Positions 11,199-61,532 of a stretch of DNA of 64,000 nucleotides are shown here, piece by piece. The first letter of the stretch is position 1. Each line of letters begins with the position of its first letter. The stretch covers positions 124,001 through 188,000 of the IMG/VR virus record IMGVR_UViG_3300005056_000001. One strand, 5' to 3'. The notes beneath the pieces were generated by a model. That model was not told where the DNA came from. It saw only the letters and a list, made by a program, of their open reading frames with translations, and searched no databases. The translations under genes were made by a program, and so were the position numbers.

Positions 11199-11516
11199 AT
11201 GACACGTGTACAAAGACCCTCAATAAAAAATAAACCAATAAGCGAATCAACAGACTTTCCAAGCTTCTATGGCATTGATGACATGGTTACCTTTATACCC
11301 ATGTTCCGCCATCAAGAAAAATATGGCATTGTTTTAAATTATGGCATTGGTAGAATTGTTGCCGTAAGATTTACCAAGGCAAAAGTATTCTACGATATCA
11401 TAGGCGACTATCATGGAATATTATTCGACAATGTGGACTCCAATAATCTCGAGTACCCTACCGAATATCTGAATATTCCCGACCAACAACCATTTCCCGA
11501 ATGCGAAAGAGTGTAA
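11199..11516 (+). CDS. hypothetical protein
   Basis: GRIVAVRFTKAKVFYD; GTACATA at 11161. Confidence 0.6.
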   Translation: MTRVQRPSIKNKPISESTDFPSFYGIDDMVTFIPMFRHQEKYGIVLNYGIGRIVAVRFTKAKVFYDIIGDYHGILFDNVDSNNLEYPTEYLNIPDQQPFPECERV

Positions 11517-33649: not shown

Positions 33650-33712
33650 TTTTACGTAAAACTTGCGTAATCCAAAACCTTGTTGTAGATTCGTTGTATA
33701 CCAAGAAGGTAG
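33650..33712 (+). promoter_or_regulatory. repeated early promoter with 5' stem-loop
   Basis: TTTTACGTAAAA-C-TTGCGT-N17-TAGATTCG, then TACC AAGAA GGTA. Confidence 0.8.
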
Positions 33713-34343: not shown

Positions 34344-34982
34344 ATGAGTTGGCAGACAAAAAAGCTTTTGTATGAATTAAAAAACATAGAAATAGCAAAA
34401 TATAACGTAAATTTTAAATTTTTTTATGTACCTTGGAAGTCACAGGTCTTTGTTTATTGTGAGTTTAACAATGTTTTTTCTAGATATACAATGCATGGTG
34501 TTTGGGATAAAAAAGAATCTTTAGTGCTTATGATAGGACATTGGGATATCGAAGAAAAGAAACCATGTAGCTACTTTGAGCAAATATCAGCAGCACTGAA
34601 GGCCTCTATTAAAAGTAAAATAAAGACCATATCGAATGGTGATGTATTCTATGGAGATTCATTTTATTACTCCAATAGTATACTAAACGTATCAAAATTC
34701 GAATTCGGTAAAGTAAAACCATTAACATGGGACACAAGACACTCTTTATTTTACGACTACAAAAAAAAGAAATTCACACTAAATACAAATACAACAGTTC
34801 CTCAATTTCCGACAGGAAGACACGTGTCACGTATTTGTTCCGAAACATTCAAGAACTTGGATTCTTTCTTTGGTGATACCGAATGTTGGGGGGTTTTTGG
34901 TGGTAAGCGATCTAAAGATAACATCGACTACTTTGAAGGATTCTTAAAGGATTTGCAAACAAATAAAAATATTTTTACGTAA
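34344..34982 (+). CDS. hypothetical protein
   Basis: ORF whose stop overlaps the next promoter repeat. Confidence 0.6.
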   Translation: MSWQTKKLLYELKNIEIAKYNVNFKFFYVPWKSQVFVYCEFNNVFSRYTMHGVWDKKESLVLMIGHWDIEEKKPCSYFEQISAALKASIKSKIKTISNGDVFYGDSFYYSNSILNVSKFEFGKVKPLTWDTRHSLFYDYKKKKFTLNTNTTVPQFPTGRHVSRICSETFKNLDSFFGDTECWGVFGGKRSKDNIDYFEGFLKDLQTNKNIFT

Positions 34983-35016
34983 AACTTGCGTAATCAAAAA
35001 ACTTGTTGTAGATTTG
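34973..35016 (+). promoter_or_regulatory. repeated early promoter
   Basis: TTTTACGTAAAA-C-TTGCGT-N17-TAGATTTG. Confidence 0.8.
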
Positions 35017-45388: not shown

Positions 45389-45721
45389 ATGAATCAAAAA
45401 GTAAAAGAAATTCCTAGCCAATCCATAGAACTTGCCACGTCTTTGGGTTTTATCTATGACAATGAACCAACGAACTATTCGGCGATATTCAATTGGATAA
45501 GGGATGTTTATGGCCTATCCTGCACGGTTTCGATGAACCATGACTATAGCGGTTATTTCTTCATGATAAACGTGTTGTCCAAAAAAATTAAATGGTATGT
45601 CCTAGAAGATGACCTGAAGACCATAAAGTTGGAGAAAAGCTATTACATTATACAGGATATGGGGCTTGAGTCTATCTTAAGGCATATTAAGGAGACATAC
45701 CCGCTTGGTTATAGCATATAA
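45389..45721 (+). CDS. hypothetical protein
   Basis: LGF...P....F.WIR motif. Confidence 0.6.
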   Translation: MNQKVKEIPSQSIELATSLGFIYDNEPTNYSAIFNWIRDVYGLSCTVSMNHDYSGYFFMINVLSKKIKWYVLEDDLKTIKLEKSYYIIQDMGLESILRHIKETYPLGYSI

Positions 45722-45728
45722 CAGTCTT

Positions 45729-46403
45729 ATGGAAAAACAACAAAATCGCATACTCGGGAAAAACTATCGTAGCATCCGACACATTTTTGGATCCAAAAAT
45801 CCTGATAGTGACAAGTATCTTGACCCGATAAAACAAGCTTTTCTTACCAAGAAACATCGTGGTAATGACCTAATAATCAACCTAGAAAAATATGATGGCA
45901 CCAATACAGGAGTCGTAAAGGTGGATGATATAATCTATCCGATTACAAGACAAGGATATAAGGCCACGTCTTCTCCTTTCCGAATGCACCACGACTTTGC
46001 CGATTGGGTAAAATTCGAGGACGGTATTTTTGATTTTCTAAAAAATGGAGAACGTCTTGTTTTTGAATGGTTGGGGTCTCATGGACTTTCTTATAGCGGA
46101 GGAAATATTGTCTTGTTGGACATGTTTGACTCAAACAACAAACGAGTACCGTTTTTTGACCTCATAAACCTACATTGCAAGGTTCCGTTGGCTAGGGTAC
46201 TCCACATGGGGCGACAGATTTCTATAGACGATTCTATGGCACTATTAATGGACTCCCATACCCATGACATTAAATGCAATGATACGCCCGAGGGTATGGT
46301 TTACAGAAGAGAAGTCGAGGGTAAATTTGACTATATGGGTAAATTCGTCAGACACGACTTTGAGGCAGGCAAAAATTTTAATATAATCGAACAAACAATA
46401 TAA
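45729..46403 (+). CDS. RNA ligase (Rnl2-like nucleotidyltransferase domain)
   Basis: EKYDGTN (motif I), FEW, EGMVYR, KFVR. Confidence 0.75.
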   Translation: MEKQQNRILGKNYRSIRHIFGSKNPDSDKYLDPIKQAFLTKKHRGNDLIINLEKYDGTNTGVVKVDDIIYPITRQGYKATSSPFRMHHDFADWVKFEDGIFDFLKNGERLVFEWLGSHGLSYSGGNIVLLDMFDSNNKRVPFFDLINLHCKVPLARVLHMGRQISIDDSMALLMDSHTHDIKCNDTPEGMVYRREVEGKFDYMGKFVRHDFEAGKNFNIIEQTI

Positions 46404-48001: not shown

Positions 48002-48361
48002 CTAGGTCAACAAGGTTTTTATGTCTTGTTTTAGCCTAGTCATAGTGTCAGATTGTTGAAGCTCGCTGTCAGATGTTTCCTTTTCCAATATTCGGAGAGT
48101 ACCAAGCAGACATTCCATTTGTGCAATGTCTAATTCTAAAAGATAATTTCCTGATGTATTAAAAAAGTAATCCTTCATTGCCGCAATTCCGTGCTTTCCA
48201 CAGTCGTCGAAGTTGCCCAAGCATATATTATAGACATACGTTGTGGATATCGGGAATATGTTTAGCGGGTCATCCTTTTTTAGTCTTGAATACACGGCAG
48301 GCGAGATGTGCAGGTCTTCTATTGCCTTTACGGTTCTTTGTTTTAGCTCTTCGTTGTTCAT
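48002..48361 (-). CDS. hypothetical protein
   Basis: last gene of the minus-strand early operon. Confidence 0.6.
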   Translation of the reverse strand: MNNEELKQRTVKAIEDLHISPAVYSRLKKDDPLNIFPISTTYVYNICLGNFDDCGKHGIAAMKDYFFNTSGNYLLELDIAQMECLLGTLRILEKETSDSELQQSDTMTRLKQDIKTLLT

Positions 48362-48861
48362 TTTCCTTTTCTTTTGATCTTAAAAATATAATTACAGCCA
48401 TAGGTCAGCATAGTCACATTGAATTTTAGAATATAGATGGATGCCGTCCCTAGTTTCTGCAAAACAAAACCACCACCAATATAAATTCCACTGTGGATAA
48501 GCTCTACGCAATGTCCAAGATTTTTCCCGAAAAGAATGCTATCGCCCTTCTTAAGTGTGTTTCTGTCTACCTTTGAGACGTCTGTTTTTTCGAACAAGTA
48601 TTCCTTTTTTATTGGGTCTAGGCTTTTGTGTTCTGTTACTTCTGTTGTGAAGTTGTGACAGTTTTTGTACCTGAACCGTTTTTCGTTGCAGAAGCGTCCA
48701 AGGTTAGCCTGTTGTTGTCGGGGTAGTCCTACCGCCTTGTTGTCAATTTTTATATCCACCTTCCCGACATTCTGATCAGGAATTTCAATTTCTCTTGCCT
48801 TGTACATATAGCCATTAAAGGACTCTTTTGTTTTGGTGTTTTTTGCCTTTAGGAATTTCAT
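48358..48861 (-). CDS. NlpC/P60 (papain-fold)-like Cys-His protein
   Basis: NCHNF...KKGD.ILF...HSGIYIG. Confidence 0.55.
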   Translation of the reverse strand: MKFLKAKNTKTKESFNGYMYKAREIEIPDQNVGKVDIKIDNKAVGLPRQQQANLGRFCNEKRFRYKNCHNFTTEVTEHKSLDPIKKEYLFEKTDVSKVDRNTLKKGDSILFGKNLGHCVELIHSGIYIGGGFVLQKLGTASIYILKFNVTMLTYGCNYIFKIKRKGK

Positions 48862-49211
48862 TTAAATCTTTTTGTACGAACCTCATTTCTAAGGTTCTGT
48901 AGGTCAATCTGTAGGTCAGGCTCAAACACAAAGCCTGTTTCTGTTCTGACAGCCCAACGGATTATTGGGAATGTGCCAAACAAACCGTGCCATATGGCCA
49001 AGAATGGTGCAACTGCCGTGCTCATGCTAGGAAGTATGATTGTGGCTGTCTGTCCTGCCTTTAAGTCCTCGAACTCGTCGAGTTCTAGCAGTATTGTTTC
49101 TAGTTGGTTTATTAATGTTTCGGGGGAGGTTTGATCCAACATACCTACCTTTGGTTGGTGGGTTGTTCCGTTGACTATGGCAGGATGCCCCGAGAAGTTT
49201 AGTATTTGCAT
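48858..49211 (-). CDS. csx15: Csx15-family protein (CRISPR type III ancillary homolog), stand-alone
   Basis: ILNFSGHP...IILP....A...LA..HG..G.FP.IR...DLQ.LR...R.KR. Confidence 0.8.
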   Translation of the reverse strand: MQILNFSGHPAIVNGTTHQPKVGMLDQTSPETLINQLETILLELDEFEDLKAGQTATIILPSMSTAVAPFLAIWHGLFGTFPIIRWAVRTETGFVFEPDLQIDLQNLRNEVRTKRFK

Positions 49212-49265: not shown

Positions 49266-49448
49266 TTATAGGTAATCAGCATCAAGACCACTATTCATTA
49301 ACCCTTCAAAGGCGTGCATTACACACACACCGTCATCCTCCCATATTAGAAGTATTCTCTTTACTGCCCCTTCTAGGCTTGGTGGAAATGTAATAATGTA
49401 TTCAGCACCATCCTCGTCTCTTAAATTTATATTAGTTTTACCGTTCAT
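49266..49448 (-). CDS. small hypothetical early protein
   Basis: directly downstream of an RNA motif copy. Confidence 0.65.
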   Translation of the reverse strand: MNGKTNINLRDEDGAEYIITFPPSLEGAVKRILLIWEDDGVCVMHAFEGLMNSGLDADYL

Positions 49449-49530
49449 AATATTTCGACACTTTCAGCCGCTTGTTACCTTATCCTATTTTGGCAATCGT
49501 ATGCAGCATTACTATAGGGCTGCTATTTTT
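49449..49530 (-). ncRNA. candidate structured cis-regulatory RNA, copy D
   Basis: 4-copy repeat with structure-preserving substitutions. Confidence 0.7.
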
Positions 49531-49546
49531 AATTAAGTTTTTTATA

Positions 49547-49750
49547 TTAAAAACCGTACTCTCTTGCAATGCTCATTGCTAGTACGTAACACTTTTCTTC
49601 ATTCGAATCCCCGTTGGAGAATTTATTAAAACTATAATCCTCTAACGACCTTAGCACCTTTCCACATAACCGTTTCCATGCTAGGTTGCTTTTGGTAGAT
49701 TACATCGCTTCTATCTCGTGTAATTCCTTTAAAGCTTTTGCGTAATCCAT
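49547..49750 (-). pseudogene. 67-codon gene interrupted by TAA at codon 17
   Basis: MDYAKALKELHEIEAM*STKSNLAWKRL...AREYGF*. Confidence 0.55.
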
Positions 49751-49793
49751 GATGTTTTTAGTGTTAAAAGTGTACTACCTTATTGGTATGCAA

Positions 49794-49835
49794 CGAATCT
49801 ACAACAAGTTTTTAATTACGCAAGTTTTACGTAAA
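49794..49835 (-). promoter_or_regulatory. repeated early promoter, copy D (16-nt spacer)
   Basis: TTTACGTAAAAC-TTGCGT-N16-TAGATTCG. Confidence 0.78.
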
Positions 49836-49880
49836 ATATTTTACTTTATTTCAAAACTTTCTTTTTGTAAATTGCAACAA

Positions 49881-49922
49881 AACAAGCCACAAACCCCGAC
49901 ATATAAGTGGTTGTGGCTTGTT
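49881..49922 (-). terminator. terminator hairpin (stem shared with 34139-34178)
   Basis: AACAAGCCACA...TGTGGCTTGTT. Confidence 0.7.
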
Positions 49923-49975
49923 TTAAATTATTTTAAGGATTGTAAGTCCACTATTCATTAACCATTCGACACTTT

Positions 49976-50329
49976 CTACCTACGTTTAATATAATAATAT
50001 TTTATATCAACCAAGGAACTAACCGACAAAAACCTAGGAGTAAGAACAATAACATTTTCACTAGTCCCCATCCTTTTGTAATTCGGATTAAAATCGTCAT
50101 ACATATTCAATGTATAGGTCAGTGTGTCTACAAACTTATCCGAGACAATAACAAGTGTTAATAATGAGTCATTGACGCATATTGTGCCTGACTCATTGAT
50201 GTATTCACCTAAAACAACTTCATTGCTTAAAGAAACCTTTGTGACAGTTTTTACTTGGCTGTAACATAATGTCTGTCCGTAACAGTATGACGTAAGCAAT
50301 AACAATAAAGGAAATAATAATTTTTTCAT
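49976..50329 (-). CDS. putative secreted protein
   Basis: signal peptide MKKLLFPLLLLLTSYCYG-Q (Bacteroidota-style Gln at +1). Confidence 0.6.
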   Translation of the reverse strand: MKKLLFPLLLLLTSYCYGQTLCYSQVKTVTKVSLSNEVVLGEYINESGTICVNDSLLTLVIVSDKFVDTLTYTLNMYDDFNPNYKRMGTSENVIVLTPRFLSVSSLVDIKYYYIKRR

Positions 50330-50481
50330 TTTGTGTGATTTTGTGATTCTGTTGTGTATTAAAATATTTTTGTTAAAGGCATATATGTACCTAACTTTGT
50401 AGGTACTTTCTAAGGTAGCGTTTTAGGCCCTTTTCTCCTTCTGTAAGGCTTTCTTGGTCATATTAAAAGGTGTATGCTTCT

Positions 50482-50904
50482 TTATGCCATTGCTGACATA
50501 TATTCTCCTTTTGGTATACTATCAATTCTGTTAATTGATTTGATGAGGAATTTTCTCCTTTCCCAATTAGGCAAATCTACCTTCCAATCTTCATAGTTGG
50601 AAGAGTCTAAACATTTCCTGCTTGGTTTGTCCCTAGTAACAGCGGAGATAACTCCGCCTAGCATGGTTGTTTTAACATAAGCAATCGCCTCCTCTTTCGA
50701 GGGTACACTTAACCCACATATTGGGCGGTTCAGGTATACATCGCCATTCGTTTCATCTTTATCCGTGAGACTTACCTCACAGATAAATTTGCTAATTATC
50801 CCGACACATGTTGTGTAAGCTGCCCCATCTTCACGGTATGCTACACAGGCAACAGATGGAAAAATAACACCGCCAATACTCTGTACATTTATTATGATTT
50901 GCAT
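50482..50904 (-). CDS. hypothetical early protein
   Basis: directly downstream of an RNA motif copy. Confidence 0.65.
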   Translation of the reverse strand: MQIIINVQSIGGVIFPSVACVAYREDGAAYTTCVGIISKFICEVSLTDKDETNGDVYLNRPICGLSVPSKEEAIAYVKTTMLGGVISAVTRDKPSRKCLDSSNYEDWKVDLPNWERRKFLIKSINRIDSIPKGEYMSAMA

Positions 50905-50986
50905 AATATTTCAGCACTTTCAGCCGCATGCCACCTTATCCTATTTGAGTGATCGTATGCAGCTAAATTATAGGGCTGCTATGTTT
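50905..50986 (-). ncRNA. candidate structured cis-regulatory RNA, copy C
   Basis: as copy D. Confidence 0.7.
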
Positions 50987-51000
50987 TTAATTGTAATTTT

Positions 51001-51240
51001 CTATATCTTACTTGCAAGGTTTTTAACGCCTATTTTTTCACCGTAACTGTTTACTGCTGCGTCAACATCATTCAGCTCTGTATACGAAATCAACTCGTAT
51101 AATTCAAACCCTTGTTGGGGAGTTAGAGTATAAAATTCTACTTGGTTCCCGATATTGAATTCAATCCCTGCTTCAATACAACGGTTTGAGTTATTACATA
51201 ATGCATTGTATGTGTCGAGTACTGTATTAGAAGTTTTCAT
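51001..51240 (-). CDS. hypothetical early protein
   Basis: start reassigned to 51240, behind the promoter. Confidence 0.65.
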   Translation of the reverse strand: MKTSNTVLDTYNALCNNSNRCIEAGIEFNIGNQVEFYTLTPQQGFELYELISYTELNDVDAAVNSYGEKIGVKNLASKI

Positions 51241-51282
51241 AATATTAGTCTTTTTTAAGTGTACTACCTTATTGGTATGCAA

Positions 51283-51325
51283 CAAATCTACAACAAGTTT
51301 TTTAATTACGCAAGTTTTACGTAAA
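51283..51325 (-). promoter_or_regulatory. repeated early promoter, copy C
   Basis: TTTACGTAAAAC-TTGCGT-N17-TAGATTTG. Confidence 0.8.
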
Positions 51326-51363
51326 GTTAATTCAAAGTATTTCAAACTTTATTCCGAAACAAA

Positions 51364-51417
51364 AAACAAAAACCGTCATAACCCTGTATTTATCAGTGAT
51401 ATGACGGTTTTTGTTTT
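51364..51417. terminator. terminator hairpin
   Basis: AAACAAAAACCGTCATA...TATGACGGTTTTTGTTT. Confidence 0.7.
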
Positions 51418-51429
51418 AGATTAAAATTA

Positions 51430-51837
51430 CTACTTCTTTGGTAAGTCAATATTTTTACCAAAGAAAACGACATCAATAAGGTCGTCAACTCTAGATGTTA
51501 CAGCCTTTGACGAGGTCAGGTCGTTCCATTTGGTTTCTTTGACAGTTTCGGACGTCGCATTTGTCCAATAGCTGTTGCAATTTCCGTACATCATGGCCGA
51601 ATGATAGGCTTGATCGTCTGCCATTTCTTCGGCAGTTGAAAAGCTTTTTCCGCTGTTAGATTTGAATGGTTTATCCATGCTATTTGTTTTAAGTGTTAGA
51701 GAACCCTCATTAATGTAATCTATATGCTTTGTAGGTGGCTCGTCGTAAATACCAACCATTTCCCCGTGTGGAAACTCTTTGATTTCTGCAACTTCGTAAA
51801 GTGTGCCTCCGAATATTACTTGGTCGCCCTTTTTCAT
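51430..51837 (-). CDS. hypothetical protein
   Basis: ORF in the cassette array. Confidence 0.65.
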   Translation of the reverse strand: MKKGDQVIFGGTLYEVAEIKEFPHGEMVGIYDEPPTKHIDYINEGSLTLKTNSMDKPFKSNSGKSFSTAEEMADDQAYHSAMMYGNCNSYWTNATSETVKETKWNDLTSSKAVTSRVDDLIDVVFFGKNIDLPKK

Positions 51838-51902
51838 ATCTATATTAGTTTAAAATGTTAAGGTTTGTAAGCAGGTTTGTACTTGCTTAGGTTACTATAC
51901 AG

Positions 51903-52187
51903 TTAAATACTAGTGATTTCAACAGAACCCAACTTTCCTCTAAAATTATACATGAATTTCACCCATTCCCCTTTTACGGGTTCGTAGCATTGGAAGTAAT
52001 CTTTCATTGTTACGCATCCCACTTCCTCAAGCCCCCATACCTCAAGGACTTTTATAATTTCGGGTAGCCAACCCGTAGATAGAGCAACTACATCTGACTC
52101 ATGATATGCTGTGTCATACAACTCCGCATTTAGTTTTTCTATTTTCGCTACAGCTAGTGTAGCATTTTTAAGATTTATAGTTTTCAT
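51903..52187 (-). CDS. hypothetical early protein
   Basis: directly downstream of an RNA motif copy. Confidence 0.65.
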   Translation of the reverse strand: MKTINLKNATLAVAKIEKLNAELYDTAYHESDVVALSTGWLPEIIKVLEVWGLEEVGCVTMKDYFQCYEPVKGEWVKFMYNFRGKLGSVEITSI

Positions 52188-52269
52188 AATAATTCGGCAC
52201 TTTCGGCCGCTTGTCGCCTTATCCCATTTAGGTGATCGTATGCAGCATTACTATAGGGCTGCTATGTTT
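52188..52269 (-). ncRNA. candidate structured cis-regulatory RNA, copy B
   Basis: as copy D. Confidence 0.7.
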
Positions 52270-52307
52270 TAATTAAAATTTTCTATAATTACCCTTTCGG
52301 TATGCAA

Positions 52308-52349
52308 CGAATCTACAACAAGTTTTTAAATTACGCAAGTTTTACGTAA
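52308..52349 (-). promoter_or_regulatory. repeated early promoter, copy B
   Basis: TTACGTAAAAC-TTGCGT-N17-TAGATTCG. Confidence 0.8.
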
Positions 52350-52503
52350 TATTAATTTGAAATATTTTAAAACTTTCTTTTTGTTTTAAATTACATTAAG
52401 AATTGTAAGCAGTTTTTGCACTTGCTTAGGTATTATTTCTATCTCTACACAAAACCGTATCCACCAATAAATAGGATTGAAACACTTCGTCTTTCCCCCC
52501 TTG

Positions 52504-53169
52504 TTACATGATATCTTTATCTAATTCGGCAATTTCTTGCAGGAGTTTGGCTTTCCTTGCCTTAGCCCTAGCTATCTTAGGGCTGCCGAATCTTACCCAA
52601 AATTCGGGGAAAAATTCCCCTGTGCTATCCGTCTCTATTAGGTCGTCCACAGAAAACATTCTTAATAGAGTATGATTAGGTAACGTGCGTCTCAGCTCAT
52701 CTAAGATGCAAAAATATAGGAATCCTTTAAATCCTATACTTTCTAGTGCTTGAATCAAGCCCTTTAGCTGATTCAACCTATCTTGTTCGGGTAATCGCCT
52801 ATAGATTCTTAACGTCTCAAGGAGGTGATTCTGTATTAATTCCCCGTTATATGTTATTGGGGCATCCCCTACGTGGTTCTTTACTACATCTAGGTATACC
52901 TGAAATATACTTACTGAAGGAGTAAGCACCTCGCTATGGTGCTCTTCTGTATTCCATTCAGAAAGCTCGAAGCCATCCCATCGGCTTTTTTCTTCGTTAT
53001 AAAAGTATTCATATACTCGCCCATCAAGTATTAAGTACTTGTTGGACTTCAATTCAGACTCTTCCTCCTTTGTCAAATCAACAAGGAATCCCTGCCAATT
53101 ATCAAACTGACACTCTTTAGACTTAATTAAGTCTAATGTCCCCGTACTTAAAACTTCAAATCTACTCAT
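52504..53169 (-). CDS. hypothetical early protein
   Basis: directly downstream of an RNA motif copy. Confidence 0.7.
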   Translation of the reverse strand: MSRFEVLSTGTLDLIKSKECQFDNWQGFLVDLTKEEESELKSNKYLILDGRVYEYFYNEEKSRWDGFELSEWNTEEHHSEVLTPSVSIFQVYLDVVKNHVGDAPITYNGELIQNHLLETLRIYRRLPEQDRLNQLKGLIQALESIGFKGFLYFCILDELRRTLPNHTLLRMFSVDDLIETDSTGEFFPEFWVRFGSPKIARAKARKAKLLQEIAELDKDIM

Positions 53170-53251
53170 AATATTTCGGCACTCTCAACCGCTTGTCACC
53201 TTATCCTATTTGAGTGATCGTGTGCAGCATTACTATAGGGCTGCTATGTTT
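53170..53251 (-). ncRNA. candidate structured cis-regulatory RNA, copy A
   Basis: as copy D. Confidence 0.7.
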
Positions 53252-53289
53252 TAATTAAAATTTTCTGTCATTAACCTTTCGGTATGCAA

Positions 53290-53332
53290 CAAATCTACAA
53301 CAAGGTTTTTAATTACGCAAGTTTTACGTAAA
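53290..53332 (-). promoter_or_regulatory. repeated early promoter, copy A
   Basis: TTTACGTAAAAC-TTGCGT-N17-TAGATTTG. Confidence 0.8.
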
Positions 53333-53529
53333 ATTAATTCAAAGTATTTTAAAAAATCCACAAAAAACAAAAACTACAATTTATTACACCACTTCCTTTG
53401 TATATCAAAAACTAATTCCTATATTGCAGAATAATGGTGTAAGTATCATGTTTATTCACATTAACCAACGACAAACAGATACCTCACAAGTCTTTTGGCG
53501 TTCCTAAAGTAGGACATAAAAAACAACCT

Positions 53530-54735
53530 TTGAAGAAAAACAAGACATATAAATACAGGTTATCCCCTAATGTTACACAAAGCATTATGCTGAATAAAAC
53601 ATTCGGTTGTGTGCGTGCATATTGGAATAATCTTGTTGCGACATTTAATTCGTATGATAAAGTAACTAATCCCAAGCCTTTATTTAATACAGGAAAGGAG
53701 TTTAGTGACGTTTTTGTTTACGCAAAGGAAGTATCTGCTGCATCACTACAGCAAAAGTTTCGTGATTTTTCTCAATTCAAAAATCAGTTCTTCAATAAAA
53801 AAAGGAAAAAGAAAATAGGAAGGCCAAGCTTTAAGAAAAAAGGTTTTGGAGATTCCTTTAGATTGCCCAACCAAAAAATCCGTATCAAGGATAACAAAAT
53901 TAGACTTGAAAAGATTGGTTGGGTTAAATTTGACAACCACAGACAATTGCCTGTGGATTCACGTGTCCTGTCAATAACAGTAAAGAAAGACAGTGTAGGA
54001 GATTATTTTGCTTCTGTCTGTTTTGAGTATGTATGGAAGCCCAAGATAAATAGAATGAACATTATAGAGTCAAAAAAGGAAGTATCTACTATAAAACCAA
54101 ATGTGGGCATCGACCTAGGACTTACCTATTTAGCCATCCTTTCGGATGGTACAGTATTCTTGAATCCTAAATATCTTAGAGAAAGCCAATCTAAGCTTAA
54201 AAAGTCACAAAGAATCCTTTCCCGAAAAATAAAAGGTAGTGTACGATGGAACAGGCAACGGATAAAGGTTGCCAAATTACACCGTAAGATTGTTCGTCAA
54301 CGTGATTGGTCACATCATAACATAACCACGTGGATAGCCGACAATTACAACAACGTAGGGATTGAAACGTTAAGTATACAAAACATGATGAAGAACAGGA
54401 AACTTTCTAAATCTTTTGCTGATACCTCACTAAGTAAATTTGTCAATATGCTTATTTATAAGGTAGATGATAGAGGCAACGAGGTAGTCAGACTAGGAAC
54501 GTTTGTTCCTTCGACAAAAGAATGTTCTTCCTGTTCACACCAACAGACCGTTGCGCTATCTGAAAGAACCTTTAAATGCGAATGCTGTGGATTTGCCATG
54601 GATAGGGACTTGAATGCAGCAATAAATATTAAGAAAAAGACCGTAGGAGTTAATGCGGTCATCGCCAATGGCGACAAACGAACACTGAGCAACAAGAAGT
54701 CTCTACACCCGAATGTGGGTGTAAAGCAGTTGTGA
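53530..54735 (+). CDS. tnpB: TnpB RNA-guided endonuclease (IS200/IS605, IS1341-type, no tnpA)
   Basis: YKYRLSPN..FGCVR..WN; GIDLG; IETL; CSSC/CECC; DRDLNAAINI. Confidence 0.95.
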   Translation: MKKNKTYKYRLSPNVTQSIMLNKTFGCVRAYWNNLVATFNSYDKVTNPKPLFNTGKEFSDVFVYAKEVSAASLQQKFRDFSQFKNQFFNKKRKKKIGRPSFKKKGFGDSFRLPNQKIRIKDNKIRLEKIGWVKFDNHRQLPVDSRVLSITVKKDSVGDYFASVCFEYVWKPKINRMNIIESKKEVSTIKPNVGIDLGLTYLAILSDGTVFLNPKYLRESQSKLKKSQRILSRKIKGSVRWNRQRIKVAKLHRKIVRQRDWSHHNITTWIADNYNNVGIETLSIQNMMKNRKLSKSFADTSLSKFVNMLIYKVDDRGNEVVRLGTFVPSTKECSSCSHQQTVALSERTFKCECCGFAMDRDLNAAINIKKKTVGVNAVIANGDKRTLSNKKSLHPNVGVKQL

Positions 54736-58718: not shown

Positions 58719-58997
58719 ATGAATGCAAATTTTCACATAGAAGAGTATTGTAGTTCGACACCAACCTACGCTGTTCTAACAAACGAAGACTTGAAAAATT
58801 ATTACACCACAGACTTTTATAGCCCCGAGTCCGAAAAAGGTTATAACGATGAGGACTACTATAATACCAACAAGATCATAGACATTTATAGTCCTGAATC
58901 CGAGGTCGAAAAGGGTTATAACGAGTAGGATTCCCACAATGGCGACAAAATCATAGAAAGCTTTGCGGACTATGGAAGAAGAATGAATACAAATTAA
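58719..58997 (+). pseudogene. chimeric duplicate of fragments of 59006 and 59391, with an internal TAG
   Basis: MNxNFHIEEY start plus two YSPES..EKGYN copies. Confidence 0.65.
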
Positions 58998-59005
58998 CTA
59001 CGAGC

Positions 59006-59380
59006 ATGAATACAAATTTTCACATAGAAGAATATAACAATCCGAACCCAACCTACATTGTTCTAACCATGAGCTATGTAAGTTTTAGCGACTACTTGCC
59101 CGAGATTGCCAAGGTTTTAAATCTTAAAACCTTCAAGGGCACCGTTTTGTTTGATTTACTTTTGAATAATGGCAGACATCATAGATTTTATGATGTCGAG
59201 TTTTCCGATAAGACGTTTCAACTGTCCACATTTAAAAATATTAAACCAAATCAAGACCTCCTGAAATTCTGTGCAAACTTTTATATCAAAAATTTATCGT
59301 TGATTGATGATAGCCTTTTCCCTGAATCCGAAAACACCCTGATAAAAAATCATATTAAAGAGTATTCACAAACAATATAA
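59006..59380 (+). CDS. rnlB: RnlB/LsoB-family antitoxin, orphan
   Basis: IVLTMSY.S...L.EI...L....FKGTVLFDLLLNNG...RF. Confidence 0.78.
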   Translation: MNTNFHIEEYNNPNPTYIVLTMSYVSFSDYLPEIAKVLNLKTFKGTVLFDLLLNNGRHHRFYDVEFSDKTFQLSTFKNIKPNQDLLKFCANFYIKNLSLIDDSLFPESENTLIKNHIKEYSQTI

Positions 59381-59390
59381 ACAATAAATA

Positions 59391-59786
59391 ATGAGTAAAA
59401 AACGTGTAATGTACGGCGGTGTAGCCGATTGGACTGTAGCAAACAAGGAGATGTATGAACACTTGAGCAAAACAGTCGTTTCTATAAATTTCTTTGAGAT
59501 CGGAGCAGGGTCAGAGCTAGATTGGATTGTTGCCGCAGACATGAAATCTGCTAGAGAATGGCTAAAAAGAGAAAGTGGGAACACCAAAAGTAGGACAAAG
59601 CAGTTGTCCAATGATGTTTTGGACGACTATTACATCACAGACATTTATAGTCCCGAATCCGAGGCAGAAAAAGGTTATAACGAGGAAGACTACTTCCGTG
59701 GCTACAAAATCATAGAAAGCTTTGCGGACTATGGAAGACGTCTTAAGAATAGTTGTCCACATTTGATTGCGTCAACAAAAGAGTAA
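59391..59786 (+). CDS. hypothetical protein
   Basis: ORF. Confidence 0.65.
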   Translation: MSKKRVMYGGVADWTVANKEMYEHLSKTVVSINFFEIGAGSELDWIVAADMKSAREWLKRESGNTKSRTKQLSNDVLDDYYITDIYSPESEAEKGYNEEDYFRGYKIIESFADYGRRLKNSCPHLIASTKE

Positions 59787-59954: not shown

Positions 59955-60944
59955 TTATACATCCTTTAGTTGCTCCTTAATACTATCGGCCAGAAATTTG
60001 GCTAAATTGACAGGAACAGCATTCCCAATCATTTTATATCCTGTGGCAACTTTTTTGTAATGAAAAATAAAATCATCAGGAAATGTTTGTATCCGTGCAC
60101 ATTCTCTTACGCTTAGGCGTCTGTATAAATGTTCTTGTGTGGGTTCGAATATGCGCTTGTCACGCTCAATAGATACCATTTTTGGAGCCTGTGGATGTAT
60201 GGGGGCATGTCTTCCTCCTGCCTGAATAGTAAAGGACTGTTCGTTCCAACTTCTGACCCTGTTTCTTGACATATACATTGACGAAAAACCTCCGATCATA
60301 TATTCATGGTTGGGTACTTTGCACTGTCCGTTGCTATAATTCTTTTCTAGCGCAGCAAGGCTATTGTGTTGTAAGTCCGATATTGTCTCCTGTAGTGTTA
60401 TTTTCGGGAATGTAATGTCAGGAAATTTGAAATCGAAACCCAAATCTTTTCGGATGCCAATAAATATCACACGTTTTCTGTCTTGGGGAACATTGTAGTC
60501 GGATGCATTAAGGAGTTTGAATGATAGGTTATAACCAACACCCGCATTTTTTAACATTTCCTTTATGTTATCCAAGGCAGATTCGTGTTTTTTGAGCAAC
60601 ATACCACTCACATTTTCTGCCAAGAAGAATTTGGGTTGTTTGTCATTAAGGATTCTAATAAAGTCAAAGAACAACTGTCCTCTTTTGTCGTCCATACCCT
60701 TAAGACTACCTGCTTCGCTCCAACTTTGGCAGGGCGGGCCACCGATGATACCATCACAATCAGGAACCGCATCCGAGGTTATTTTTGTGATACTTCGTTT
60801 GTCCAATATGGTTTCGGGATGATTCTTTTCATAGGTTTCCCAAATATCCTTGTCATATTCGTTGGCCCAAATAACATCAAAGCCTGCCTTTTGGAATCCT
60901 AAATCCAATCCGCCTGCACCCGCAAAAAAAGAAACTACTTTCAT
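59955..60944 (-). CDS. C5 cytosine DNA methyltransferase, M.HaeIII-like (probable GGCC specificity)
   Basis: FAGAGG, GGPPCQSWSEAG, ENV, QDRKR, TRD MSRNRVR.W.E..FTIQA.GR...HPQAP. Confidence 0.93.
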   Translation of the reverse strand: MKVVSFFAGAGGLDLGFQKAGFDVIWANEYDKDIWETYEKNHPETILDKRSITKITSDAVPDCDGIIGGPPCQSWSEAGSLKGMDDKRGQLFFDFIRILNDKQPKFFLAENVSGMLLKKHESALDNIKEMLKNAGVGYNLSFKLLNASDYNVPQDRKRVIFIGIRKDLGFDFKFPDITFPKITLQETISDLQHNSLAALEKNYSNGQCKVPNHEYMIGGFSSMYMSRNRVRSWNEQSFTIQAGGRHAPIHPQAPKMVSIERDKRIFEPTQEHLYRRLSVRECARIQTFPDDFIFHYKKVATGYKMIGNAVPVNLAKFLADSIKEQLKDV

Positions 60945-61037: not shown

Positions 61038-61532
61038 CTAATCAATACCCTTAAACGGCTTGAAGTGTTCTGTTATAATAAGAAACTTTGACCTGCTGTT
61101 GTTTGCATAGCTTATCATGGCCGTCCATTTCATTTTGTTTGTCTCAAAGTCACGGCTTCCTTTTATTGTCTGTGACAGTGGCTTTACCTCAACAAGCCAT
61201 CTTTCGTCGTTATCTGTGTTGACCACAAAATCAATATAATAATTTCCTTGTTTGTAGCCCTTTATTTCATTGCCTCTTTTATATCCAACCGCAAATGGTT
61301 CCGAATCCCACGACACGACCTTGGCACACCTTTCGCACCATATCATAAATTTACGCTCAAGGGATGATCTGTATATCGGGCGATATTGACCAATGTATTT
61401 GTTCTTCAGGGGGAGTTGAAAGTATCCATTGTCGTACACAAGTTTTTTGTTTGGCTTGTTATTCCTCATACGGGCACCACTTTCTTGGGTGATTTCCCCG
61501 ATTATTATTTTTTGGGCGTTCTTGTTTTTCAT
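61038..61532 (-). CDS. T4 gp4-like head completion nuclease (TnsA-like PD-(D/E)XK)
   Basis: KYIG....IYRSSLERKFM.WC...W.SE...YYIDF...LVEVKP. Confidence 0.85.
   Translation of the reverse strand: MKNKNAQKIIIGEITQESGARMRNNKPNKKLVYDNGYFQLPLKNKYIGQYRPIYRSSLERKFMIWCERCAKVVSWDSEPFAVGYKRGNEIKGYKQGNYYIDFVVNTDNDERWLVEVKPLSQTIKGSRDFETNKMKWTAMISYANNSRSKFLIITEHFKPFKGID

What the first reader, a model, noticed from the sequence alone, without database searches (positions are those of the whole stretch)
49449..53251. Unrecognised 82-nt pseudoknotted RNA element abutting the start codon of four unrelated early genes
Seen (minus strand, near-consensus): GCAGC CCUAU AGUAAU GCUGC AYACGA UCACY NAA AURGG AUAA GGUGA CAAG CGGY Y GARA G U GYYG AAWUAUU AUG. 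P1 is GCAGC/GCUGC and is invariant while its loop 3' half varies. P2 is 5 bp with a compensatory C-G>U-A change in copy D, several G-U wobbles and one A-C mismatch in copy B. Loop 1 CCUAU pairs with loop 2 AUAGG/AUGGG. P3 keeps pairing through G-U changes and keeps a GNRA loop (GAAA/GAGA). The wobbles work only on the mRNA strand, and P3 always ends 7 nt before AUG. The element is a 5' leader in two cassettes and intercistronic in two. It fits no riboswitch or ribozyme I recognise. Inference: a portable translational enhancer or ribosome-recruiting element (the likely host lacks SD use), a regulator-binding or ligand-sensing leader, or a new self-cleaving RNA controlling an anti-defence cassette array that includes Csx15.
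Basis: partly seen in the sequence, partly recalled or inferred. Interest (0 to 1): 0.92.

Follow-up and report, generated by a model that had tools for sequence, protein, structure and literature searches.

The report
Conserved RNA leader in phage cassettes
An 82-base non-coding stretch that can fold into three small hairpins ends exactly at the start codon of five unrelated accessory genes in three marine Flavobacteria-type phages; it is kept by selection, matches no catalogued RNA family, and most likely controls translation while also marking the edge of swappable gene cassettes.

Summary
The four copies are real: minus strand, 49449-49530, 50905-50986, 52188-52269 and 53170-53251. Each runs up to the ATG, with hairpin P3 ending 7 nt before it. 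The window comes from a 368-kb uncultured phage with Bacteroidota-type promoters and no Shine-Dalgarno use. Two more copies occur in Tara Oceans phage contigs. One precedes an orthologue of gene A. The other precedes an unrelated gene that replaces it precisely between the element and the next gene. No Rfam family matches. No copy turned up in GenBank phages, the rest of IMG/VR, or the exact-pattern scan of 185,579 bacterial genomes.

Between orthologous cassettes the element is 84% identical, against 54% at four-fold-degenerate sites, so it is under selection. All three sense frames carry stops. Stem columns change only by transitions (9 of 9), while unpaired columns show 6 transitions and 9 transversions. 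Pairing holds in 111/114 cells on the sense strand and 100/114 on the antisense strand. Formal covariation is not significant: one compensatory pair in six sequences. The proposed pseudoknot is no better than chance.

Best reading: a portable structured leader that gates translation of an accessory-gene set, probably through a shared trans-acting factor, and serves as a cassette boundary. The mechanism is inferred, not shown.

The parts
53170..53251 (-). Element copy A (leader, about 35 nt after the predicted transcription start). P1 is 53244-53240/53228-53224, P2 is 53217-53213/53200-53196, P3 is 53191-53188/53180-53177. A 7-nt tail follows, then the ATG at 53169-53167.
   Evidence: (CM 109.8 bits)
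52188..52269 (-). Element copy B (leader directly after promoter module B). It has the A-C mismatch in P2 and AUGGG in loop 2.
50905..50986 (-). Element copy C (between the 79-aa ORF and the 140-aa gene). The 3' half of loop 1 differs (AAUUUA).
49449..49530 (-). Element copy D (after an interrupted short ORF, before the 60-aa gene and the Csx15 operon). P2 carries the compensatory U-A pair.
52504..53169 (-). Gene A, 221 aa, no family. Its only homologue (70% identity, Tara) also carries the element.
51903..52187 (-). Gene B, 94 aa, ORFan.
50482..50904 (-). Gene C, 140 aa, ORFan.
49266..49448 (-). Gene D, 60 aa, first gene of the unit that continues into Csx15 (48858-49211), an NlpC/P60-like ORF (48358-48861) and the 119-aa 'CGKHG' protein (48002-48361).
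53272..53379 (-). Promoter module A: TTACGTAAAACTTGCGTAA palindrome over a -33 TTG, and a -7 box TAGATTTG at 53297-53290.
   Evidence: -7 consensus TAnnTTTG from PMC7641319
52290..52397 (-). Promoter module B.
51265..51372 (-). Promoter module C. It drives the 79-aa ORF 51001-51240, then element C.
49776..49883 (-). Promoter module D. It drives the interrupted short ORF 49547-49750, then element D.
52396..52409 (-). 3' boundary module CTTACAAnYCTTAA after gene A. Further copies lie at 51858-51871 after gene B and 49933-49946 after the 117-aa gene.
   Evidence: 3 matches, 0.34 expected; read
51361..51414 (-). Terminator-like hairpin plus T-run closing cassette B. A second one at about 49876-49920 closes cassette C.
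   Evidence: read directly; the Rfam 'mir-994' sub-threshold hit is this hairpin

Best explanation
The element is a portable, structured 5' leader RNA. It has three short hairpins (P1, P2, and P3 with a GNRA-type loop) followed by a 7-nt A/U tail and the AUG. It acts in cis on translation initiation of a small set of accessory, probably early, phage genes in a Shine-Dalgarno-blind Flavobacteriia host.

P3 occupies -22..-8, inside the zone that host and phage mRNAs normally keep A-rich and unstructured. I therefore infer that it works as a translational operator or gate: one shared trans-acting factor (a phage or host RNA-binding protein) recognises the same leader on several unrelated messages and times or limits their translation. 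Aca proteins do this on the structured 5' UTRs of anti-CRISPR operons.

Because the block is identical in front of different genes and stops exactly at the ATG, it also serves as the homology border at which genes are exchanged between phages.

Shown: it exists in six versions; it acts on the sense strand; it is non-coding; it is under purifying selection; its spacing to the AUG is fixed; a gene swap ends at its border. Inferred: RNA folding in vivo, the direction of the effect, and the existence of a trans factor.
For: Six distinct copies precede five unrelated genes in three phage lineages. All are co-oriented with the gene, and P3 always ends 7 nt before the ATG.

For the orthologous pair A/E, the element is 84% identical, against 52% at third codon positions and 54% at four-fold sites. 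My arithmetic gives a binomial p<1e-6.

Every copy has stops in all three sense frames, and an in-frame stop lies 6-60 nt before each ATG.

Stem columns show 9 variable columns, all transitions. Unpaired columns show 6 transitions and 9 transversions (one-sided Fisher about 0.004 by my arithmetic). 97.4% of cells are paired, with one compensatory pair. Sense-strand pairing is 111/114 cells against 100/114 antisense.

The phage's other genes have A-rich, G-poor upstream regions and no SD, and other copies of the same promoter use short plain leaders. The element is therefore an optional extra module.

The 20-kb Tara locus shares almost nothing with the window except this element and one small protein.

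The gene swap is bounded by the element.

Precedent: Aca1/Aca2 bind structured 5' UTR motifs of anti-defence operons, and Aca2 represses translation in this way (PMC13551039).
Against: There are only six sequences, so covariation is not significant (72/500 shuffles). P1 never varies, so it says nothing for or against pairing.

The number of invariant columns (56/82) is about what uniformly spread substitutions would give (my estimate), so 'conserved loops' cannot be separated from low overall divergence.

Folding energies are ordinary.

No trans factor was identified. The one protein family that accompanies the element in all three lineages also occurs in relatives without it and has no recognisable fold.

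The transition bias in stems could partly reflect their higher G+C content.
Confidence: 0.4

Rival explanations
1. A ribosome-recruiting leader. The folded domain docks on the 30S subunit or protein S1 and replaces the usual A-rich tract, giving strong context-independent initiation to newly acquired genes. It would be a structured, SD-less initiation region like that of E. coli rpsA.
For: The spacing to the AUG is fixed at 7 nt in all six copies. A is kept at -3 and -6 in the tail. It is used both as a leader and between cistrons. The host type ignores SD sequences (PMC7797042, PMC6847099). From memory, the three hairpins with a GGA in a loop resemble the rpsA leader.
Against: Other genes of the same phage initiate without it. 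The in-silico accessibility of the start region is not better than with a shuffled element, and is often worse. Structure within -20..+20 goes with lower translation in F. johnsoniae (PMC6847099, section 17).
Confidence: 0.2
2. Only a DNA-level homology block. It would be a repeat kept because it mediates recombination and cassette shuffling (a PeSL-like role), with no function as RNA.
For: The element is the exact left border of a gene replacement between L003 and L018. The array also has repeated promoter modules and repeated 3' modules. Its distribution among related phages is sporadic.
Against: Recombination needs no fixed 7-nt distance to the ATG. It also does not explain the transition-only, wobble-compatible changes in stems on one strand. 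The four copies within the genome are as diverged from each other (83-89%) as from the Tara copies (80-87%), so they are not being homogenised. Promoter modules already provide homology.
Confidence: 0.1
3. An RNA processing or stabilising site. It would be either a new self-cleaving ribozyme or a nuclease target that separates the downstream cistron and leaves it with a protective structured 5' end.
For: Three of six copies are intercistronic. The domain is compact, and its sequence stays 80-92% identical across phages that share little else.
Against: No hammerhead, twister, twister-sister, pistol, hatchet or HDV-like model matches even at E<=10. Nothing in the sequence points to a cleavage site. 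Fixed spacing to the AUG is not required for this role.
Confidence: 0.1
4. A riboswitch that senses a small molecule, for example a host immune nucleotide signal, and opens or closes the start region.
For: The size and the multi-helix layout fit an aptamer. It sits at the translation start. Csx15 and other defence-related genes are nearby.
Against: The controlled genes share no function or family. There is no conserved alternative pairing that would act as an expression platform. There is no Rfam match. The tertiary contact (pseudoknot) is unsupported.
Confidence: 0.07
5. A transcription-level leader signal (put/nut-like) that modifies RNA polymerase so that it reads through the terminators between cassettes.
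For: It lies just downstream of early-type promoters in copies A and B. Terminator-like hairpins separate the cassettes.
Against: The exact abutment to the ATG in all six copies is not expected for an antitermination signal. Copies C, D and F lie after a translated ORF. Each cassette has its own promoter.
Confidence: 0.04

Closest known systems
[quoted passage not shown]
   Same: A conserved small hairpin motif lies in the leader of phage counter-defence-type operons, in front of variable ORFan genes. The same motif can govern several neighbouring operons. A small conserved helical protein sits at the downstream end of the operon; here that is the 'CGKHG' family, in all three lineages.
   Different: There is no sequence relationship. 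No HTH domain or Aca family is detectable in the accompanying protein. That protein also occurs without the element. Binding is untested. The host is SD-blind, so the mechanism cannot be RBS occlusion in the usual sense.
PeSL mobile regulatory cassettes of T4-type phages (PMC2839356, PMC4122927)
   Same: Repeated regulatory modules flank non-essential ORFans in a hyperplastic region, and recombination between them swaps genes. Here there are repeated promoter modules, terminators and 3' modules, and a documented swap.
   Different: PeSLs are a promoter plus a terminator stem-loop. The 82-nt element is neither. It lies downstream of the promoter or between cistrons, and it ends at the start codon.
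SD-less structured initiation region of E. coli rpsA, and T4 translational operators (gene 32 leader pseudoknot, RegA sites) - recalled from memory
   Same: Structured leader elements lie immediately 5' of an AUG and set or repress initiation without a canonical SD. In phage T4 they co-regulate several early messages.
   Different: There is no homology. Those systems have identified protein partners (S1, gp32, RegA), and none is known here. The resemblance is architectural only and was not tested.
Small self-cleaving ribozymes and pseudoknotted riboswitch aptamers in Rfam (pistol, hatchet, twister-sister, preQ1, guanidine-III and others)
   Same: Similar size, several short helices, and a possible loop-loop contact.
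   Different: No covariance model matches. The helix order differs from pistol: here P3 lies outside P2. The loop-loop contact is at chance level.

Membership tests
Any Rfam 15 family (4227 models) | Score at or above the family's gathering threshold. | tested here: not met
   One search gave 0 hits in the whole window. One search, at E<=10 on 49300-53400, gave only a U1A_PIE chance hit on the opposite strand of P1 (23.7 bits against 50) and unrelated hairpins.
Known self-cleaving ribozyme classes | Match to a class consensus (hammerhead, twister, twister-sister, pistol, hatchet, HDV-like). | tested here: not met
   One search gave no match at E<=10.
Known self-cleaving ribozyme classes | Site-specific self-cleavage. 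| not testable with these tools
   Needs an in-vitro transcription and cleavage assay.
Riboswitch | Aptamer helices supported by covariation. | tested here: inconclusive
   One search found one compensatory pair, and 72/500 shuffles reach the score. Only six sequences are available.
Riboswitch | Controlled genes share a pathway linked to one ligand. | tested here: not met
   The five downstream gene families are unrelated and unannotated.
Riboswitch | Mutually exclusive conserved alternative structure (expression platform). | tested here: not met
   No conserved alternative pairing appears in the folds.
Pseudoknot / kissing-loop RNA | Loop-loop pairing beyond chance and kept by compensatory change. 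| tested here: not met
   loop shuffles reach the observed run in 9-53% of trials; no double change, and the fifth pair is lost in copies E and F.
PeSL-type mobile regulatory cassette | Host-type early promoter plus terminator stem-loop, repeated between ORFans. | tested here: met
   This is met for the array as a whole. The promoter module has a -7 TAGATTYG box and occurs at least 8 times in the genome, and terminator hairpins were read. Promoter activity itself is not tested. The 82-nt element is not one of these two parts.
PeSL-type mobile regulatory cassette | Gene replacement between relatives bounded by the repeat. | tested here: met
   homology between L003 and L018 runs through the element to ATGAG, stops, and resumes at the next gene. 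The genes in between encode 225 and 185 aa and are unrelated.
Aca-type leader operator | Specific binding by a co-encoded regulator. | not testable with these tools
   The candidate partner is suggested only by its position. It has no HTH or Aca signature.
IS200/IS605 end or omega-RNA of the neighbouring TnpB | Association with the TnpB gene, on its strand and at its 3' end. | tested here: not met
   TnpB lies at 53530-54735 on the plus strand. The elements are upstream of it on the other strand. The Tara copies have no TnpB nearby.
Integron attC site | A 3'-of-cassette imperfect palindrome, promoterless cassettes, and an integrase nearby. | tested here: not met
   The element lies 5' of genes, its sequence is conserved, the cassettes carry their own promoters, and no integrase is present in the neighbourhood.
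Protein-coding sequence (either strand) | Open frame with a conservative substitution pattern. | tested here: not met
   Stops occur in all three sense frames. The antisense open frame lacks a start in copy A, and most of its differences change the amino acid (read).

The most novel reading that the evidence does not exclude
The element is a structure-specific ribosome-docking leader. It would be a bacterial, IRES-like module that lets a phage load SD-blind Bacteroidia ribosomes onto any gene placed 7 nt downstream, independently of the A-rich tract that host messages need.
Probability: 0.15. Interest if true: 0.85.

Novelty: new variant of a known kind. Interest (0 to 1): 0.5.

Why it matters
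How Bacteroidia ribosomes choose start codons without Shine-Dalgarno pairing is an active question. Here phages of such hosts keep, under selection, a folded G+C-rich module where messages are normally unstructured and A-rich, and they place it in front of interchangeable genes. If it gates or drives initiation, it is a compact natural handle on translation in Bacteroidota, useful for mechanistic study and as a genetic part. It would also extend the known idea of RNA-level control of phage counter-defence operons to a new host phylum and a new motif. In addition, it refines the picture of how phage accessory genes are shuffled: the exchange border here is the translation leader itself. Its reach is narrow, with three lineages in all the data searched, and that limits its general importance.

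Tried and rejected
1. Rfam at gathering thresholds and at E<=10 gave nothing real.

2. Exact-pattern scans:
- Four IMG/VR patterns found only the source contig plus 27 chance loci, all of which failed the covariance model.
- One metagenome scan gave one true new locus out of nine.
- One scan of the GTDB genomes gave none.
- GenBank phages by blastn gave none.

3. Homologues of the downstream proteins were sought. Only gene A has one.

4. Related phages were reached through the shared small protein (L033-L036). They lack the element. A weak hit in L034 (E 0.93) is not the element.

5. Two covariance models with filters off found no degenerate copies in the window, in L015 or in the relatives.

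6. I tested an 'insulator keeps the start site open' idea with partition-function accessibility against shuffled and deleted elements. There was no consistent gain, and pairing at -22..-8 is only moderately above background.

7. I considered P2 as an SD/anti-SD mimic. GGUGA is present in only 1 of 6 copies (GGUGG, GGCGA and GGUAA in the others), so I rejected it.

8. I considered a 16S h45-like 10-mer. About three such matches are expected by chance (my estimate), so I rejected it.

9. I considered a uORF (AUG in loop 1). It is absent in copy C, so I rejected it.

10. I considered links to TnpB and to integrons and rejected both (see the membership rows).

11. The structure of the accompanying small protein was modelled at pLDDT 82.8. 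It has no PDB or viral fold match and no Pfam family.

12. The sub-threshold CRISPR-DR7-like hit was checked. Its 3' decamer is not enriched in the window.

Full report
**What is there**

On the minus strand, an 82-nt block occurs four times: 53170-53251 (A), 52188-52269 (B), 50905-50986 (C) and 49449-49530 (D). The copies are 83-89% identical to one another. A 21-nt core pattern finds exactly these four sites, against 0.01 expected. Each copy runs up to an ATG. The genes that follow encode 221, 94, 140 and 60 aa. They show no similarity to one another and match no Pfam, NCBIfam or PHROG family.

- P1 is GCAGC/GCUGC with an 11-nt loop.
- P2 is 5 bp with a 12-nt loop.
- P3 is 4 bp, plus a Y-G pair closing a GAAA/GAGA loop.
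- A 7-nt A/U tail follows.

**Context**

The window is part of a 368,109-bp IMG/VR contig. Its genes lack Shine-Dalgarno motifs (4 of 72). Their upstream regions are A-rich and G-poor, with A at -3 in 69%. This is the pattern described for Flavobacterium johnsoniae (PMC6847099).

Each cassette begins with a roughly 100-nt repeated promoter module. It contains a palindrome, TTACGTAAAACTTGCGTAA, and TAGATTYG, which fits the Bacteroidetes -7 box TAnnTTTG (PMC7641319). That module occurs at least eight times in the genome. The other four copies drive genes through short plain leaders without the element. Copies A and B sit directly behind the promoter. Copies C and D sit behind a short ORF. Cassettes end in terminator-like hairpins and in a third repeat, CTTACAAnYCTTAA.

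Csx15 is real (48858-49211) and lies in the unit headed by copy D. A TnpB gene (53530-54735, plus strand) abuts the array but is unrelated to the element.

**Relatives**

The public data searched hold only two further versions, both from Tara Oceans assemblies.
- Copy E (L003:17-97) precedes a 70%-identical orthologue of gene A.
- Copy F (L010, identical in L018-L024) precedes an unrelated 185-aa gene, again with P3 ending 7 nt before the ATG.

The F phage has a methylase closest to those of Polaribacter and Cellulophaga phages, which fits Flavobacteriia hosts. Its 20-kb locus shares with the 64-kb window only the element and one small protein.

L003 and L018 are homologous through the element up to ATGAG, and again from the start of the next gene (a 53-aa zinc-ribbon protein). 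The gene in between has been replaced.

Nothing was found in the following:
- GenBank phages
- the rest of IMG/VR
- the exact-pattern scan of 185,579 bacterial and archaeal genomes
- four related phage contigs reached through the shared small protein

Covariance models with filters off find no degenerate copies.

**Is it functional, and at which level?**

1. Selection. Between the orthologous cassettes A and E, third codon positions are 52% identical and four-fold sites 54%. The element is 84% identical, like second codon positions at 83.7%.
2. Not coding. Every copy has stops in all three sense frames, and an in-frame stop lies 6-60 nt before the ATG. The antisense open frame has no start in copy A, and its differences are mostly non-synonymous.
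3. Strand and structure.
   - All nine variable stem columns are transitions. Unpaired columns show six transitions and nine transversions (Fisher about 0.004, my arithmetic).
   - 97.4% of stem cells pair, with one C-G to U-A double change shared by D, E and F.
   - The same columns pair in 111/114 cells on the sense strand and 100/114 on the antisense strand.
4. The four copies in one genome are as far from each other as from the Tara copies. They are therefore not recent duplicates and are not being homogenised.

There are limits to this evidence. With six sequences, formal covariation is not significant (72/500 shuffles). P1 never varies. Single-sequence energies are ordinary. The number of invariant columns is what evenly spread substitutions would give (my estimate).

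The pseudoknot is not supported. Complementarity of 4-5 nt between the loops is reached by 9-53% of loop shuffles. It has no compensatory change and loses a pair in E and F.

**Mechanism**

The conservation stops exactly at the ATG, the spacing is fixed, and the element is always co-oriented with the gene, whether it is a leader or intercistronic. All of this points to translation initiation.

P3 puts a G+C hairpin at -22..-8. This phage's other genes have about 60% A and at most 10% G at those positions, and F. johnsoniae mRNAs show lowered structure from -20 to +20 (PMC6847099, section 17). In-silico accessibility of the start region is not improved by the element.

I therefore favour a gate or operator over an enhancer: the same leader on several unrelated messages lets one factor time or limit their translation. 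The best documented parallel is Aca1/Aca2 binding to structured 5' UTR motifs of anti-CRISPR operons, which can extend to neighbouring counter-defence operons (PMC13551039).

A small helical protein family with a CGKHG motif lies downstream, in the same transcription unit, in all three element-bearing lineages. This is the position typical of such regulators. However, it also occurs without the element, and it has no recognisable fold or domain. It is a candidate only.

Independently of the RNA function, the element acts as a recombination border, much as PeSL cassettes do in T4-type phages (PMC2839356).

**Rivals**

The rivals, in order of my confidence, are:
- ribosome recruitment
- recombination only
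- processing or ribozyme
- riboswitch
- antitermination

None is excluded. Each has a stated refuting experiment in its own entry.

**Verdict**

This is a real, selected, previously uncatalogued leader element with a very narrow distribution. The hairpins are modestly supported and the pseudoknot is not. The function is inferred. It is a worthwhile but small candidate RNA motif, of more interest for Bacteroidota translation and phage cassette biology than as a new ribozyme or riboswitch.

Noticed in passing
window 33653-33702 (+), 34976-35015 (+); L015:11069-11086 and 11457-11474 (-): The same promoter module occurs at least four more times in the 368-kb genome, each time with a short plain leader and no 82-nt element. 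It has the TTACGTAAAACTTGCGTAA palindrome over the -33 region and a TAGATTYG -7 box. The palindrome looks like an operator for a phage repressor.
   Followed up: partly
window 49933-49946, 51858-51871, 52396-52409 (-): A third repeat, CTTACAAnYCTTAA, follows genes in the array and is preceded by an AAGCA..TGCTT hairpin (3 matches against 0.34 expected). It may be a 3' cassette border or an RNA 3'-end signal.
   Followed up: partly
window 53530-54735 (+): A TnpB (IS200/IS605 RNA-guided endonuclease family, NF040570, E 1.6e-75) is inserted right next to the cassette array and reads away from it. No TnpA was seen nearby, and its omega-RNA was not looked for.
   Followed up: no
window 52446-52483 (+): A sub-threshold Rfam CRISPR-DR7 hit (23.2 bits against 37, E 0.31) ends in GGAUUGAAAC. 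It lies antisense to the array, between gene A and promoter B. It could be a solitary CRISPR-repeat-like unit near Csx15, or chance. Its 3' decamer is not enriched in the window.
   Followed up: partly
window 49547-49750 (-): The short ORF between promoter D and element D is a single 68-codon frame interrupted by an in-frame TAA at 49702-49700. It is probably a decayed gene.
   Followed up: no
window 48002-48361 (-); L010:628-846; L003:968-1081; P0006-P0009: A small helical protein family with an invariant CGK.G motif (CGKHG in most members) is the only protein shared between the window and the Tara phage locus. It lies downstream of an element copy in all three lineages. The AlphaFold model has pLDDT 82.8, but there is no PDB, viral-fold or Pfam match. 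Only eight library proteins reach E<=0.001 among 1.8 billion representatives, and five of those (the query included) look like true members.
   Followed up: yes
window 58719-59786 (+), 59955-60944 (-), 61038-61532 (-), 45705-46403 (+): The neighbourhood holds several accessory genes, by the precomputed Pfam calls. There is one RnlB-antitoxin-like gene (59006-59380) among neighbouring small ORFs that share internal DNA repeats (D4, D5, D7). There are also a DNA methylase, a TnsA-like endonuclease and an RNA ligase. This fits a counter-defence or accessory island.
   Followed up: no
L003:810-968 and L018:10567-10728: A 52-53-aa lysine-rich zinc-ribbon ORF (CxxC...C...C) directly follows the swapped gene in both Tara phages. 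It was not called as a gene in the source records.
   Followed up: no
window 48358-48861 (-): A 167-aa ORF after Csx15 has a weak, sub-threshold NlpC/P60 match (E 0.0016, 18.9 bits against 23).
   Followed up: no
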